Below are positions 23,927-48,932 of a stretch of 64,000 nucleotides of DNA, one piece after another; position 1 is the first letter of the stretch; every line of letters begins with the position of its first letter. Location of the stretch: the IMG/VR virus record IMGVR_UViG_3300047320_000285, positions 186,001-250,000 of that record; one strand, 5' to 3'. The notes under the pieces were generated by a model, which was not told the DNA's origin, searched no databases, and was given only the letters and a program-made list of their open reading frames with translations. Made by a program: the position numbers and the translations under genes.

Positions 23927-24004
23927 GTCGGCCCGTTGCTACCCACTCTGCCTTTACGGGTGGAGTGGGTAGTTGCGGGACCGATTTCTTTTTGAGATAG
24001 AACC

Positions 24005-32490: not shown

Positions 32491-33120
32491 ATGGCGACGA
32501 AGCATTATTTCCTCTCGTTCGAAGAACGGGTGGACGAAGTAACGAAGCGAGGATGGCCAGAGGAGTACGCGCAGCTCTGGTGGAAGAAATACTACGGACA
32601 TCTAACAAGCGCGGTCTATCGCGGTACCAGCTCTGAGCTAACGTTTGGAGACTATCTGGATAAGATCCTTGAGGCAGGGATTAAGATCCCAGAGCAAGTC
32701 TCAAAATACGCAGCTGGGTATGTGCTTGGTCGCTACACTGACGAGGGTTCTTATACGGTCGATAGCTGTCGGTTCATTACGCAGCTGGAGAATACTCACG
32801 AGGCAATCAAGAATGGTCGTTGGGAGAATGTCTGGAAGATCGTAGGCGATGTTCGTCGCGGTCAGACTAAAGAGACGCTTGCTTTTCTCGCGAAGATGGC
32901 TGAAACCAAACGAGGCCGAACTGCAGAAACCCATGCAGGCATAGCGATTCAGGCTGACAAGATTGCTCGTGACTTTGCTTTCCAAGCACCTGATGGCACA
33001 GTCTATCGTGGTCGAAACCTGAAGAAGTTTTGTCGCGAGCACAATCTGAATTCCGGTAACATGAACCAATTGTTGCTTGGTAGGAGGGACTCAGTCAAAG
33101 GCTGGAAACGTGTGCCGTAG
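32491..33120 (+). mobile_element. Free-standing HNH-like (beta-beta-alpha-Me) homing endonuclease with NUMOD-type repeats and C-terminal HTH
   Basis: LGRYTDEGSYTVDSCRF..EN nuclease-like motif, basic MAETKRGR repeats, and APDG..Y...L..FCREHNL....KGW; more AT-rich than its neighbours. Confidence 0.75.
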
Positions 33121-33208
33121 ATTTTTTCAACCCTATATTACCCAACTGTAATAGCACCAGCAATCACGTTGATGCGTTACCATCCCTTACATTTCCTTTA
33201 TACTGGAG
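33121..33208 (+). promoter_or_regulatory. Early (vRNAP-type) promoter and leader
   Basis: T-run then exact TATATTAC (33134-33141); leader homologous to 12001-12070. Confidence 0.7.
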
Positions 33209-33215
33209 CTTCATC

Positions 33216-34025
33216 ATGACGACCGCCGCTAATGCTCAAGACACGAACAATACGAACAATGCCGCTAAGGCGACGATGGCTGACAAGCTCAAAGCCATGG
33301 GTGCGATTCCCCCGATCCAACTGGAAGCCAAGCACGGCGACCTGTTCGGTCAACTGTTCTTCGGTACCGCCAAGCGCGCCCTCGGTGGCGAATGTGGCGA
33401 TGTGCTGGCCACCGCATACGCGGAGCGCACCGTGATGGACAAGACGATGTACTACGCCGAAGGCACGGTGGATGCTGTGAAAGACGGCGCCGTCTCAGCT
33501 TACACGACCGCCAAGGAAATCGTGGTCGACGGCTACGACACCGTCAAGGGTTGGGTGTCAGGCTCGGCCAAGGAAGACGCCAAGAAGAAGGTGGCGGACG
33601 ACGCTGAGGCTGAGAAGAACAACCAAGCGAACGTCAACCGCGCTCGCTTCGAGAAGCACTTCGACCAGATCGAAAAGACGGTTGAGTACAACGCGAAGTG
33701 GGAAAATGGCACCGGTTACTTCAACCATCTGGTGACCAACAAGGATCTGCAAACGAGCCTGAACATCGGTGAGATGGCCAAGTGCACGGATCCGCACGGT
33801 CGCAAGATGATCATCATGCAAACCTCGCTGGGTCTGCTGGTGGTGTTCGCTCGCCATGTCGATGAGAAGACTTCGTTCCGCGTGAATGCGGACAAGGACC
33901 TTATCAAGGAAATCGAAGGCTTCAAGGAAGAGTGCACCGACAGCGTGCTGAGCGCGAAGGGCTTCGACATCATCTTCGGCGAAGCGGATAACTTCACGCT
34001 CGCCCAGAAGCTGATGCAGGCATAA
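33216..34025 (+). CDS. Hypothetical early protein (269 aa)
   Basis: GGAG SD, strong codon bias; amphipathic Ala/Val/Lys middle region and a C-terminal WENGTGY domain. Confidence 0.8.
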   Translation: MTTAANAQDTNNTNNAAKATMADKLKAMGAIPPIQLEAKHGDLFGQLFFGTAKRALGGECGDVLATAYAERTVMDKTMYYAEGTVDAVKDGAVSAYTTAKEIVVDGYDTVKGWVSGSAKEDAKKKVADDAEAEKNNQANVNRARFEKHFDQIEKTVEYNAKWENGTGYFNHLVTNKDLQTSLNIGEMAKCTDPHGRKMIIMQTSLGLLVVFARHVDEKTSFRVNADKDLIKEIEGFKEECTDSVLSAKGFDIIFGEADNFTLAQKLMQA

Positions 34026-34479: not shown

Positions 34480-34576
34480 CGGAGCAGTGGGCGGGGCTCC
34501 CTATGGGGGGCCTTTAATTTTTTCTCTTCATGCACCACAGTGTGTAAGACAAACACTAACAAGGAGTAATACAGCC

Positions 34577-35581
34577 ATGTCCGACGTTCTCACCCAAGCT
34601 AAGCGCAATGTGCTCATCATTGGCTGCGGCGGTGGCGGTACCAACATCTCGTATAACCTCGAGAAGCTGCGCAACAGCAACGAACTCGGTTTTGCTACGG
34701 CCGAGATCGTCTACGTCGACGCGTCGCGCTCGAACATGCGTGCTGACATTCCGGCCAAAGCGGTCTACCTGATCGACGGCCTCGACGGCTCCGGCAAGGT
34801 GCGCTCGGAGAATCACAGCGAAATCGGTCTGCGGGTGAAAGACATCCTGCAGCGTTTCCGTCCGGGCGATCTGGTGATCGTGATTTCGACGCTGGCAGGT
34901 GGCACCGGTTCGGTGATCAGCCCGTTGCTGGTCAAGGAACTGCTGATGCGCGGGATTCCGACTATCGTGATCGGCGTGGGTGACACCACCACCCGGCTCG
35001 ACACCGAGAACACACTCAAGTCGATCCAGTCGTTCGAGCACATCGCGAAGAAGGCCGACGTGCCGGTGGTGATGCAGTATCTGGAAAACAGCGAACGCAA
35101 CTCGCGCGCGGAAATCGACAAGCAGGTCAAGCAGATGGTCGGCTCGCTGTGCTCGTTGTTCTCGGGCGAAAACCGCGAACTGGACAGCAAAGACCTGTTC
35201 AACTTCCTGAACTTCAGCAACCCGAAGGTCACGACGTATCAGGCACAACTGGCGACGCTGCATCTGCTGGGTCGCGACGACGATTTCAACGGCTTGGGCA
35301 ATATCATCTCGGTGGCCTCGCTGCTGTCCGAAGGTGAAGCGTTCAGCCTGCCGGTGCGTCCGGAATACGCGACCTACGGTTATCAGCCGCGTGGTGTGAA
35401 CGAAACGGTGGCCAAGGGTGCGCCCTACCACTTCGTGATCGCCGACGGCGTGGTGCCGGAAGTGGTGAGCGAGCTGGAGAAAATCATCGGCACGCTCAAC
35501 GAGCAGCAAGAAGCTCGTCTGTCGCGTCGATCCATTCTGGGTTCGGCCGCTCGTCCTGACGAGTCCGGTCTGATTCTGTAA
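34577..35581 (+). CDS. phuZ: Phage tubulin PhuZ
   Basis: IGCGGGGTNI, DGSGKVRSEN and tubulin signature AGGTGSVISP; start at MSDVLT after AAGGAG. Confidence 0.95.
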   Translation: MSDVLTQAKRNVLIIGCGGGGTNISYNLEKLRNSNELGFATAEIVYVDASRSNMRADIPAKAVYLIDGLDGSGKVRSENHSEIGLRVKDILQRFRPGDLVIVISTLAGGTGSVISPLLVKELLMRGIPTIVIGVGDTTTRLDTENTLKSIQSFEHIAKKADVPVVMQYLENSERNSRAEIDKQVKQMVGSLCSLFSGENRELDSKDLFNFLNFSNPKVTTYQAQLATLHLLGRDDDFNGLGNIISVASLLSEGEAFSLPVRPEYATYGYQPRGVNETVAKGAPYHFVIADGVVPEVVSELEKIIGTLNEQQEARLSRRSILGSAARPDESGLIL

Positions 35582-35589
35582 AGGAACTG

Positions 35590-36268
35590 CTATGGGGCTG
35601 CGCCTTGTGTCGCTCGCCGCCGCGATTTGCACCGGCTTCGCACACGCGTTTAACGCGAGTTCGTGGAAGGTGGTCGCGGCGTCGACGGCATGGAACAGGG
35701 CTCAGCGTGACGAACCCGGACCTGGAATCGCTTCTGGGCAAACCGGGATCAGCCGGGGTCGCCAGTCAAGTGATGGCTGGCGCTTCGCACAACGCGTCCC
35801 GAGGAGGACTGTGGCACGGGTTAAGGGTATCCGTCAGCCGCAGTTAGCTTGACTCGGCGCGATGGTCTCGCGAAGAACCCAACTACCTCTGGGGCTGCAC
35901 TGCCGAACCGAGCCGCGTCGGGGGAGCATCAGGTGTGGCGCCCAGCTGGGCACGTTGAGCTAACTCTCTTTCCACCAGAGAGTGATGAAACATGAAATGG
36001 CCTGCCACCGCCGGTGAGCAGACGGACGAAGCACTTCAGGGTTAGATGGGACCGTAAGCCGCGTGACGTATTAGCCCATGGGACTAGCGTACGGGAGCCG
36101 AGAGCCGCCGGAATCGCCTGCAAGGCACGAAGTCCAAGGTATCCGCTACTTAGATGAGACCTAGTCCGCCCCCGGTTTCCGGGTCAGCCGCTAGGAGATT
36201 CGTAAGGGCGGGCCTTCAAGAACCTCTTGCTTCGGCAGGGGGTAGTCTTGAAGGCCCGTTTTTCTTTT
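35590..36268 (+). ncRNA. Candidate large structured non-coding RNA (about 670 nt), family unrecognised
   Basis: No credible ORF; begins at a TATG motif, contains many helices with G-U pairs, and ends in a 13-bp terminator stem plus T-tract. Confidence 0.6.
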
Positions 36269-36278
36269 AGGAGTTTTC

Positions 36279-36788
36279 ATGTCACGTCGTTATCACCACC
36301 CACCCTTTAGCGAACACCAGCTGAGCAATGCGGTGGGCGCGTTCAAGACGTGGGATGATCAGATCAAGAACCACGGTCAGATCCTGTCGGTCGAAGATCT
36401 GGTCCACCGGATCGCTGAATGTCTGTTTGAGGAAGTCGATCTGAACCCCAAACCGGATCGACTGGTGTATCTGTCCTCGCCTTACAATCACCCCGATCCC
36501 GAGGTGAAGGAAAAGCGTCGTAAGGCCGCCTGTAGCGCCGCTGGTTATCTGATCGAGCGCGGTATCCCGGTTCACTCACCGATCGCCCACAACGCCGCGA
36601 TTCTGGAGCAAACGAGTGGCAAGAGTGGGTGGGAGATCTGGAAGCCGCAGGATCTGGCGCTGCTTAAGGCCAGCACGGAAATGGTGATTCTGTGTCTGCC
36701 GGGTTGGGAAGCCTCTGAAGGGATTCGGGGTGAGTTCCACGCCGCCATGGAGATGGGTAAGCCCGTGAGCTATATGCGAGCTGATTAA
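36279..36788 (+). CDS. DUF1937 / nucleoside 2-deoxyribosyltransferase-like protein
   Basis: LVYLSSPY, HSPIAH, W...D..L, LPGWEASEGIRGE and GKPV motifs. Confidence 0.75.
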   Translation: MSRRYHHPPFSEHQLSNAVGAFKTWDDQIKNHGQILSVEDLVHRIAECLFEEVDLNPKPDRLVYLSSPYNHPDPEVKEKRRKAACSAAGYLIERGIPVHSPIAHNAAILEQTSGKSGWEIWKPQDLALLKASTEMVILCLPGWEASEGIRGEFHAAMEMGKPVSYMRAD

Positions 36789-36875
36789 CTGGGTCCGGCC
36801 CGTGTGGCCGGGCTTTATGCCCCTGTGTGTGATTTCTTACATAGGCAACAAATACTGTGTATAGGGGACACCACT

Positions 36876-48851: not shown

Positions 48852-48893
48852 GTTCCATCGGCAGGGCTAGGGTCACCTAGTCCAAGGACGATG

Positions 48894-48932
48894 GAGGGAG
48901 AGACTTCGGTCTCTCCCTCTTTCTTTTTTTCC
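48894..48932 (+). terminator. Intrinsic terminator after chmA
   Basis: GAGGGAGAGAC-TTCG-GTCTCTCCCTC followed by a T-rich tail. Confidence 0.8.

What the first reader, a model, noticed from the sequence alone, without database searches (positions are those of the whole stretch)
35590..36268. Candidate ~670-nt ornate non-coding RNA with its own transcription unit downstream of phuZ
Seen in the sequence: about 690 bp without a credible gene in a densely packed genome. It starts at TATG (35591-35594, the phiKZ late-promoter core) and ends in a 13-bp stem plus T-tract (36209-36268). Helices I can read: 35618-25/35674-81 (8 bp); 35645-57; 35761-68/35774-81; an 11-bp long-range helix 35843-53/35954-64 with two adjacent G-U pairs; CTCTC/GAGAG around 35964-81; GGACTAG 36081-87/CTAGTCC 36161-67; 36171-83; and a possible 5'-3' closing pair GGCTG 35596-600/CAGCC 36185-89. 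The GACUA/UAGUC pair matches the P7 signature of group I introns, yet both flanking genes are intact with their own ends and SD, so this is not a simple intron. Inference: a stand-alone large phage RNA (catalytic or scaffold, comparable in size to ROOL/GOLLD-class RNAs) in a nucleus-forming phage. I do not recognise the family.
Basis: partly seen in the sequence, partly recalled or inferred. Interest (0 to 1): 0.88.

Follow-up and report, generated by a model that had tools for sequence, protein, structure and literature searches.

The report
Conserved structured RNA downstream of phuZ
The 700-base "gap" after the tubulin gene phuZ of this nucleus-forming jumbo phage holds a previously undescribed folded RNA element, conserved in at least 16 related phage contigs, but its first third also carries a conserved small open reading frame, and it is neither a group I intron nor shown to be a separate gene.

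Summary
The gap and its terminator are real. The same element follows phuZ in at least 16 other contigs in two clades, including the cultured Burkholderia phage FLC9.

Evidence for a structured RNA:
- The element is more conserved in nucleotides than the phuZ coding sequence.
- It has stops in all frames over its 3' 415 nt.
- Covariation is strong in each clade separately: 38 and 60 pairs with changes on both sides, against 4-19 in slid controls.
- A covariance model built from one clade finds the other.
- G-U pairs outnumber A-C about 7:1, so the folded molecule is + strand RNA.
- No Rfam family matches the window or its relatives.

- The 5' 261 nt (35592-35852) is an 86-codon ORF that is open in every homologue. 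Its indels are multiples of three, and pN/pS is lowest in that frame. Its composition, however, is unlike a typical gene.
- The "P7" pairing and the 5'-3' closing pair are not conserved.
- TATG is not conserved.
- No terminator or promoter-like site separates the element from phuZ. It is probably the tail of the phuZ transcription unit.

Verdict: a new, large, probably dual-function structured RNA element of unknown function.

The parts
34493..34523 (+). Hairpin plus T-run upstream of phuZ: the likely end of the preceding transcription unit
34577..35581 (+). phuZ (tubulin-like PhuZ, 334 aa)
   Evidence: Pfam Tubulin and TubZ_C_2 on the identical protein. 46.9% identical to the FLC9 homologue; annotated 'tubulin PhuZ' in many phages.
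35581..35585 (+). Shine-Dalgarno-like AAGGA overlapping the phuZ stop, 6 nt before the ATG
   Evidence: Sequence. AAGG(A/G) is present at the same place in all window-clade relatives.
35592..35852 (+). Conserved small ORF (86 codons, starts MGLR); overlaps the most stably folded part of the RNA
   Evidence: Zero stops in this frame in all 12 sequences counted or translated; the ORF is also open in L220 and L222. The other frames have 0-6 stops. The ATG-to-hairpin distance is always a multiple of 3. pN/pS 0.41-0.78 in this frame against about 0.7-1.4 in the others. Against: flat GC1/2/3, no cross-clade protein homology, no Pfam or PHROG family.
35595..35708 (+). 5' long interrupted hairpin (35595-35624 with 35675-35708; variable tip 35643-35657)
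   Evidence: A9 helices 3-4: 27 pairs, 8 with changes on both sides.
35715..35747 (+). Hairpin (35715-19/35743-47 and 35721-27/35732-38)
   Evidence: 12 pairs, 6 with changes on both sides.
35754..35787 (+). Hairpin (35754-68/35774-87)
   Evidence: 14 pairs, 8 with changes on both sides.
35812..35840 (+). Hairpin with a conserved loop (UUAAGGG and variants), conserved in both clades
   Evidence: The stems differ between clades while the pairing is kept.
35843..35964 (+). Central domain closed by the long-range helix 35843-51/35956-64. It contains helix 35889-35900/35932-35944 and the near-invariant junction GCCGAACC (35902-09) ... GGGGGAGCAU (35920-29).
   Evidence: Long-range helix: 9 pairs, 4 with changes on both sides; L220 keeps it with a different sequence (my reading of the alignment). 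Inner helix: 10 of 12 pairs changed on both sides across clades.
35966..35984 (+). Variable hairpin (CUCUC.../...GAGAG)
   Evidence: Present in the window. Relatives carry other hairpins at this place (my reading of the alignment).
36002..36021 (+). Near-invariant 8-bp hairpin with a bulged A (CUGCCACC-NNN-GGUG-A-GCAG): the signature of the family
   Evidence: One subgroup has A-U changed to G-U and a 4-nt loop.
36024..36135 (+). Long irregular helix (36024-27/36132-35 closing; variable interior)
   Evidence: A9 helices 15-21. The closing helix covaries (A-U to G-C). The interior is weaker, 76-90% paired. Not aligned by the FLC9-clade model.
36160..36195 (+). Helix 36160-71/36185-95 with a variable tip (36171-83 in the window; about 36 nt longer in L211 and L212)
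Evidence: 10 pairs, 5 with changes on both sides.
36197..36203 (+). Conserved unpaired GAUUCGU just before the terminator
36205..36268 (+). Long-stem intrinsic-terminator-like hairpin (UUCG loop) and U-run
   Evidence: The same position in both clades, with different stem sequence.
36279..36788 (+). Downstream gene (DUF1937 / nucleoside 2-deoxyribosyltransferase-like). Not part of the element. It is absent at this place in L212, L214 and the FLC9 clade.

Best explanation
The interval holds a conserved RNA element of about 680 nt, read from the + strand.

Anatomy (shown):
- Four hairpins over 35595-35840.
- A central domain closed by a long-range helix, with a near-invariant GCCGAACC...GGGGGAGCAU junction.
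- A near-invariant bulged hairpin at 36002-21.
- A 3' domain at 36024-36195.
- A terminator hairpin ending the element.

Transcription (inferred): it is most likely transcribed as the 3' part of the phuZ transcription unit, which terminator-like hairpins bound at about 34493-34523 and 36205-36268.

Coding (probable, not proven): the 5' third also carries a small ORF (35592-35852) that is kept open in all relatives and is probably translated into a fast-evolving, basic peptide. That would make the whole a dual-function RNA in the manner of S. aureus RNAIII.

Function (inferred): the 3' 415 nt is non-coding. Its conserved loops and junctions most likely act at the RNA level. They could serve as a stable folded RNA or ribonucleoprotein tied to phuZ expression, or be released from its mRNA. 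They are unlikely to be a mere transcript end.

Shown: conservation, strand, helices, absence from Rfam, ORF maintenance. Inferred: co-transcription, translation, and any function.
For: Distribution:
- Always directly 3' of phuZ, in 16 other contigs in two clades with about 47% PhuZ identity.

Constraint on nucleotides:
- Among distant FLC9-clade pairs, nucleotide identity is 73-82% in the element, against 64-70% in phuZ and 46-57% at phuZ third positions.

Covariation:
- FLC9 clade: 38 pairs with changes on both sides, against 15.3 +/- 2.6 in shuffles and 4-6 in slid controls.
- Window clade: 60, against 26.9 +/- 3.6 and 12-19.
- Cross-clade core: 25 of 52, against 8.2 +/- 2.0 and 5-9.
- A model built from the FLC9 clade alone hits the window once in 64 kb, at 35809-35947 (E = 5.6e-4), and hits the hairpin at 35986-36029 (E = 6e-6).
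- The cross-clade model finds the held-out L214 and L213 (E = 6e-7 and 9e-6).

Strand:
- G-U against A-C cells in predicted pairs: 106 v 14 and 137 v 20.

Non-coding 3' part:
- 2-10 stops in every frame, indels not in threes, no frame with low pN/pS.

ORF:
-.

Transcription unit:
- No terminator-like site between 34523 and 36205.
Against: - No transcript data exist for any of these phages, so the ends, processing and abundance of the RNA are unknown.
- The 3' non-coding part alone folds no better than shuffles (z = -1.02).
- The interior of 36024-36135 is only weakly supported, and the other clade's model does not align it.
- The ORF has flat GC1/2/3 (about 0.6/0.6/0.6, against 0.6/0.4/0.8 in PhuZ).
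- The ORF shows no protein-level similarity between clades beyond the residues encoded by the conserved hairpin.
- The Shine-Dalgarno site is weak in the FLC9 clade, and there the start codon lies inside an invariant helix.
- Each structure was predicted from the same alignment on which it was counted, and each clade has only 5-8 distinct sequences.
Confidence: 0.6

Rival explanations
1. A stand-alone non-coding RNA of about 670 nt with its own promoter at the phuZ stop. On this reading the ORF is an accident of G+C-rich, structure-constrained sequence and is not translated.
For: - The ORF region is the most stably folded part (z = -3.05) and its helices covary, with changes that alter the peptide.
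- Flat codon-position composition.
- No cross-clade protein homology.
- In the window a second frame is also open over this stretch.
- In the FLC9 clade a conserved block of about 25 nt precedes the ATG, after about 20 variable nt. That block could be a promoter.
Against: - The frame is open in all 12 sequences counted or translated, and in L220 and L222, while the other frames carry 0-6 stops.
- Every length difference upstream of the conserved hairpin is a multiple of 3, whereas downstream indels are not.
- pN/pS is lowest in that frame in most pairwise comparisons and in every pooled one.
- TATG is not conserved and is common.
- In the window's clade only 10-17 nt separate the phuZ stop from the ATG.
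Confidence: 0.22
2. An ordinary small protein gene in an operon with phuZ, plus a long 3' untranslated region whose structure serves only transcript stability and termination. No RNA-level function beyond that.
For: ORF evidence as above. The unit shares its terminator with phuZ. Long-stem terminators are usual in this phage (for example upstream of the T-runs at 23989 and 48924).
Against: - About 415 nt of non-coding sequence is conserved better than phuZ itself.
- Near-invariant junction and hairpin sequences are shared across clades with 47% PhuZ identity.
- More than ten covarying helices are far more than a stability element needs.
- The peptide is less conserved than the RNA.
Confidence: 0.1
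3. A cis-acting leader (attenuator or riboswitch-like) that controls read-through of the terminator into the downstream gene.
For: In the window, L211, L213 and L220 the Shine-Dalgarno site of the DUF1937 gene starts 2-10 nt after the U-run, leaving no room for a promoter. That gene therefore depends on read-through.
Against: - The downstream gene differs between relatives (DUF1937, a 67-aa ORF, or the LYLWYFK-family gene).
- In L212 and the FLC9 clade a conserved 70-nt promoter-like spacer follows the terminator.
- The linkage is to phuZ, not to what follows.
- No alternative anti-terminator pairing was seen.
Confidence: 0.04
4. A group I intron or other known ribozyme, or a DNA-level site such as an origin of replication or a PhuZ centromere.
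For: The GACUA/UAGUC pair in the window, and the position next to a segregation-type tubulin.
Against: - No Rfam hit even at E <= 10 in the window or E <= 0.5 in relatives.
- The 'P7' pairing is absent in relatives, and its 3' strand pairs elsewhere with covariation.
- The flanking genes are intact.
- No iterated repeats.
- The G-U to A-C asymmetry of about 7:1 shows single-stranded + strand RNA, not duplex DNA.
Confidence: 0.03

Closest known systems
Large ornate structured RNAs of bacteria and phages with unknown function (ROOL, GOLLD, HEARO, OLE, raiA)
   Same: Several hundred nucleotides, many covarying helices, near-invariant junctions and loops, carried by phages, no known function. (The comparison rests on my own knowledge of these classes.)
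   Different: - No sequence or structure match to any of them in Rfam 15.
- Narrow distribution: one lineage of nucleus-forming jumbo phages.
- Fixed position after phuZ.
- The 5' third overlaps a maintained ORF.
- The 3' part alone is not unusually stable thermodynamically.
Dual-function RNAs (S. aureus RNAIII with hld; SgrS with SgrT; SR1 with SR1P)
   Same: A highly structured RNA of about 500-700 nt that also carries a small ORF, ending in an intrinsic terminator. (Own knowledge.)
   Different: The ORF is much longer here (75-119 codons). Neither translation nor a regulatory target has been shown. No homology.
3'UTR-derived small RNAs and the UTR-derived ncRNA candidates of phiKZ (Gerovac 2021, PMC8545117; Putzeys 2024, PMC10914365)
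   Same: Lies after a coding gene and shares its terminator. phiKZ is known to make UTR-derived structured RNAs.
   Different: - Those are 70-200 nt with two stem-loops.
- They lie at other loci. phiKZ has only 54 nt between phuZ and the next gene, and the 'p40' RNA is elsewhere.
- Most 3'UTRs in those phages are under 100 nt.
Group I intron
   Same: Size, and a GACUA/UAGUC pair in the window.
   Different: The pairing is not conserved, there is no model match, and no gene is interrupted.

Membership tests
Group I intron | Conserved catalytic core (P3-P9 with the P7 guanosine site) recognisable by the family's covariance model | tested here: not met
   No Rfam hit at gathering score or at E <= 10 or in relatives. 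The proposed P7 (36081-87/36161-67) is not complementary in L211 or L213, and its 3' strand pairs with 36185-95 with covariation.
Group I intron | Interrupts a host gene whose exons join in frame | tested here: not met
   phuZ ends with its own stop, full length relative to homologues. The downstream gene has its own Shine-Dalgarno site and ATG and varies between relatives.
ROOL / GOLLD / HEARO / OLE / raiA / RNase P / tmRNA | Match to the family's covariance model (or to ARAGORN for tmRNA and tRNA) | tested here: not met
   Rfam 15, 4227 families; ARAGORN: none in the window.
Conserved structured RNA (generic) | Compensatory base changes beyond those in controls, in independent lineages | tested here: met
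   A cross-clade model also detects held-out members.
Conserved structured RNA (generic) | Strand-specific pairing (G-U tolerated, A-C not) | tested here: met
   106 v 14 and 137 v 20 cells. Caveat: the structures were predicted on the + strand.
Intrinsic terminator | G+C-rich hairpin directly followed by a U-run, at a conserved position | tested here: met
   36205-36268. The same position with a different stem in the FLC9 clade. Termination itself was not tested.
Protein-coding small gene | Frame kept open, and indels in multiples of three, across homologues | tested here: met
Protein-coding small gene | Excess of synonymous change in the reading frame | tested here: met
   pN/pS 0.41 (95% CI 0.28-0.58) in the FLC9 clade and 0.49-0.78 in window-clade pairs, against about 0.7-1.4 in the other frames. 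The signal is weak, and the frame-0 alignment was protein-guided.
Protein-coding small gene | Codon-position composition like the genome's genes; recognisable protein family | tested here: not met
   GC1/2/3 about 0.6/0.6/0.6, against 0.6/0.4/0.8 in PhuZ. No Pfam or PHROG hit. Profile-profile comparison between clades gives probability 1.2%.
Dual-function RNA | The same transcript is both translated and acts as RNA on a target | not testable with these tools
   Needs ribosome profiling or peptide detection, and genetics.
Independent transcription unit | Own promoter and transcription start | tested here: inconclusive
   TATG is not conserved (GATG in L211 and L212) and occurs 86 times on the strand. 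No sigma-70-like site on the + strand. The promoters of this phage's own polymerase are unknown.

The most novel reading that the evidence does not exclude
This is a new class of large folded RNA, specific to a lineage of nucleus-forming jumbo phages and genetically tied to the PhuZ tubulin gene. It would work as a catalytic or ribonucleoprotein-scaffold RNA, possibly together with the basic peptide encoded in its own 5' part. That would be a dedicated RNA-level component of the infection cycle with no counterpart among known RNA families.
Probability: 0.2. Interest if true: 0.85.

Novelty: new variant of a known kind. Interest (0 to 1): 0.62.

Why it matters
Structured bacterial or phage RNAs longer than about 400 nt are few. 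Those whose function has been solved turned out to be ribozymes or ribonucleoprotein cores. This one has three unusual features:
- It sits in nucleus-forming phages, where RNA traffic between the phage nucleus and the cytoplasm is an open problem.
- It is fixed next to the spindle tubulin gene.
- It combines a maintained small ORF with the most stably folded part of the RNA.

One carrier, Burkholderia phage FLC9, is in culture, so transcript mapping, probing and genetics are feasible. If the element proves to be only an elaborate 3'UTR, it still corrects the annotation of these genomes by adding a missed small ORF and a conserved RNA.

Tried and rejected
- Rfam at gathering and permissive thresholds, on the window and six relatives: nothing.
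- ARAGORN: nothing.
- blastn of the window element against 50,697 phage records: nothing. The FLC9 copy finds only itself.
- Genome collection scan with the signature hairpin: 84 chance matches, none real.
- Metagenome scan: 103 stretches, one real.
- DNA repeats or iterons: none beyond chance.
- Parallel with phiKZ: rejected. phuZ and the next gene are 54 nt apart there, and the published 'p40' ncRNA is at another locus.
- The 2023 catalogue of viral structured RNAs (PMC10690425) reports motifs of about 67 nt on average and mentions neither jumbo phages nor tubulin. I could not check whether parts of this element are in it.
- Model R2 did not align the window's 36024-36135 to the FLC9-clade long helix, so homology of that sub-domain rests on flanking anchors only.
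- More distant relatives have 760-960-nt gaps after phuZ (L215, L216, L218). They give only marginal model hits at the right place (E = 0.08-0.5) and are not counted as members.
- RTH11 (187-nt gap) and L217 (304-nt gap) lack the element.
- A candidate promoter word (CTGTGTAW) occurs before phuZ and before the gene at 36873, but not at the element's 5' end.

Full report
**Context.** The window is part of IMG/VR contig 3300047320_000285, 253,740 bp long. It encodes a nuclear shell protein, split multisubunit RNA polymerase subunits, a tail sheath, a terminase and a DNA polymerase. It also encodes PhuZ at 34577-35581, which carries the Tubulin and TubZ_C_2 domains. The closest isolate is Burkholderia phage FLC9, with 46.9% PhuZ identity.

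**The observation.**
- 35582-36278 lies between the phuZ stop and the next gene.
- A long hairpin with a UUCG loop and a U-run closes the interval at 36205-36268.
- Another terminator-like hairpin precedes phuZ at 34493-34523, and none lies between the two.
- The whole region folds better than shuffles on the + strand (z = -2.59) but not on the - strand (z = -1.10).
- The signal sits mainly in 35592-35852 (z = -3.05, 0 of 200 shuffles). For 35841-36268, z is only -1.02.

**Known families.** Rfam 15 gives no hit at gathering score in the 64 kb. At E <= 10 in the region it gives only noise, and at E <= 0.5 in six relatives it gives nothing. ARAGORN finds nothing.

**Relatives.**
- FLC9 has an unannotated 770-nt gap after phuZ that shares blocks with the window.
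- Two short signature patterns were used to search collections. They retrieved eight more FLC9-like copies from viral and metagenome contigs.
- A PhuZ protein search and a profile search with the small ORF led to contigs closer to the window. L211, L214, L212, L213, L220/L221 and L222 have PhuZ 65-82% identical where measured, and each has the element right after phuZ.
- There are thus two clades. The element is about 45% identical between them at the nucleotide level overall. An HMM of one clade still detects the core of the other, with E as low as 2e-13.
- phiKZ, RTH11 and L217 lack the element.
- Three more distant relatives (L215, L216, L218) have 760-960-nt gaps that match only marginally.

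**It is under selection as nucleotides.** Among distant FLC9-clade pairs, the element is 73-82% identical. The phuZ coding sequence is 64-70% identical, and phuZ third positions 46-57%.

**It is a folded + strand RNA.**
- RNAalifold on the FLC9 clade gives 198 pairs. Of these, 38 changed on both sides, against 15.3 +/- 2.6 in shuffles and 4-6 when partners are slid.
- Run independently, the window clade gives 183 pairs. Of these, 60 changed on both sides, against 26.9 +/- 3.6 and 12-19.
- A covariance model built only from the FLC9 clade hits the window once in 64 kb, at 35809-35947 (E = 5.6e-4). It keeps two helices whose sequences are entirely different between clades.
- A second model hits the near-invariant hairpin at 36002-21 (E = 6e-6).
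- On the cross-clade alignment, 25 of 52 pairs changed on both sides, against 8.2 +/- 2.0 and 5-9.
- A model built from that alignment finds the held-out L214 and L213.
- G-U cells outnumber A-C cells 106 to 14 and 137 to 20. This excludes duplex DNA and the antisense strand.

Caveats: the structures were predicted on the alignments on which they were counted, and each clade has only 5-8 distinct sequences.

- Supported: 35618-25/35674-81, 35761-68/35774-81, and the long-range 35843-51/35956-64. The long-range helix covaries, and L220 keeps it with a different sequence (my reading of the alignment).
- Present in the window but variable in relatives: the hairpins at 35645-57, 35966-84 and 36171-83.
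- Not supported: the 'P7' pair. Its 3' strand pairs with 36185-95, and that pairing covaries.
- Not supported: the 5'-3' closing pair. GGCUG pairs with 35704-08 in all relatives.

35592-35852 is an 86-codon ORF with AAGGA 6 nt upstream.

Evidence for a real reading frame:
- The equivalent ORF (74-119 codons) is open in every homologue. Its ATG is aligned across them. In the window's clade it always starts MGLR and has AAGG overlapping the phuZ stop.
- The other two frames carry 0-6 stops over the same stretch. All frames carry 2-10 stops downstream.
- The distance from the ATG to the conserved hairpin is always a multiple of three (237, 237, 225, 228, 234, 237, 234). The FLC9 clade has a 3-nt indel there. 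Indels downstream are of any length.
- pN/pS in the ORF frame is 0.41 (CI 0.28-0.58) in the FLC9 clade and 0.49-0.78 in window-clade pairs. In the other frames it is about 0.7-1.4. No frame shows such a signal downstream.

Evidence against an ordinary gene:
- Codon-position G+C is flat.
- The two clades' peptides share nothing except the residues encoded by the conserved hairpin.
- No protein family matches.
- In the FLC9 clade the start codon lies inside an invariant helix and the Shine-Dalgarno site is poor.
- Compensatory helix changes rewrite the peptide.

I rate translation at about 55-60%.

**Transcription unit.**
- TATG is frequent (86 on this strand) and is GATG in two relatives. Its ATG is the ORF start.
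- There is no room for a promoter between phuZ and the ORF in the window's clade.
- Co-transcription with phuZ is the simpler reading, but it is an inference.
- The element travels with phuZ, not with what follows. The DUF1937 gene at 36279-36788 is an insertion present in only some relatives. It lies between the terminator and a conserved promoter-like block, which in the others follows the terminator directly.

**Mechanism.**
- Shown: a conserved, multi-helix + strand RNA with near-invariant loops and junctions, ending in a terminator and overlapping a maintained ORF.
- Inferred: it is the tail of the phuZ transcript, or is released from it. It acts at the RNA level, as a stable fold or ribonucleoprotein. 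Its 5' part is also translated.
- Nothing here indicates catalysis.

**Literature.** Searches found no description of the element. The phiKZ UTR-derived ncRNAs are much smaller and lie at other loci.

**Verdict.** The structured RNA is real and undescribed. The 'stand-alone, fully non-coding, group-I-like' reading is not upheld.

Noticed in passing
window 36279-36872: The DUF1937 / nucleoside 2-deoxyribosyltransferase-like gene starts about 10 nt after the U-run of the element's terminator, so it has no room for a promoter. It carries its own small hairpin (36793-36814). After it comes the block TTTATGCC...CTGTGTATAGGGGAC, which in L212 and the FLC9 clade follows the RNA terminator directly. 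It looks like a promoter-less gene cassette inserted at the terminator.
   Followed up: partly
window 34535-34550 and 36850-36872; also about 29180 (-), 46080 (-), 52559 (+): A word CTGTGTA(A/T), or CAGTGTGTAAG, lies 25-35 nt before the phuZ start and before the gene at 36873. It recurs at a few other places. It may be a promoter element of the phage polymerase for one class of genes.
   Followed up: partly
window 23927-23993: A very long hairpin (about -44 kcal/mol) plus a T-run lies between a 576-aa gene and the terminase gene. Long-stem terminators seem to be the style of this phage; another lies at about 48890-48930.
   Followed up: no
L215:4003-4761, L216:4018-4858, L218:4009-4971: Relatives with 49-56% PhuZ identity also have 760-960-nt stretches after phuZ with no clear gene. 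L215 has GUUAAAGG at the same offset as the conserved loop. The models hit them only marginally (E = 0.08-0.5) but at the right place. These may be divergent versions of the element.
   Followed up: partly
L220:2216-2665: This close relative lacks about 50-60 nt between the conserved hairpin and the central helix, the equivalent of window about 35855-35890. It keeps the long-range helix and the inner helix with new sequences, so that sub-domain is dispensable.
   Followed up: partly
L211:4014-4370, L212:4029-4382, L222:2001-2357: In one sub-clade the small ORF runs on to 118-119 codons, through the conserved GCCGAACC...GGGGGAGCAU junction, with a shared RFDPIHTAL stretch. In the window's own sub-clade it stops after 85-92 codons.
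   Followed up: no
window 33000-33200: An A+T-rich stretch (G+C 0.44-0.47, in a genome of about 0.58) lies just before the 269-aa gene at 33216.
   Followed up: no
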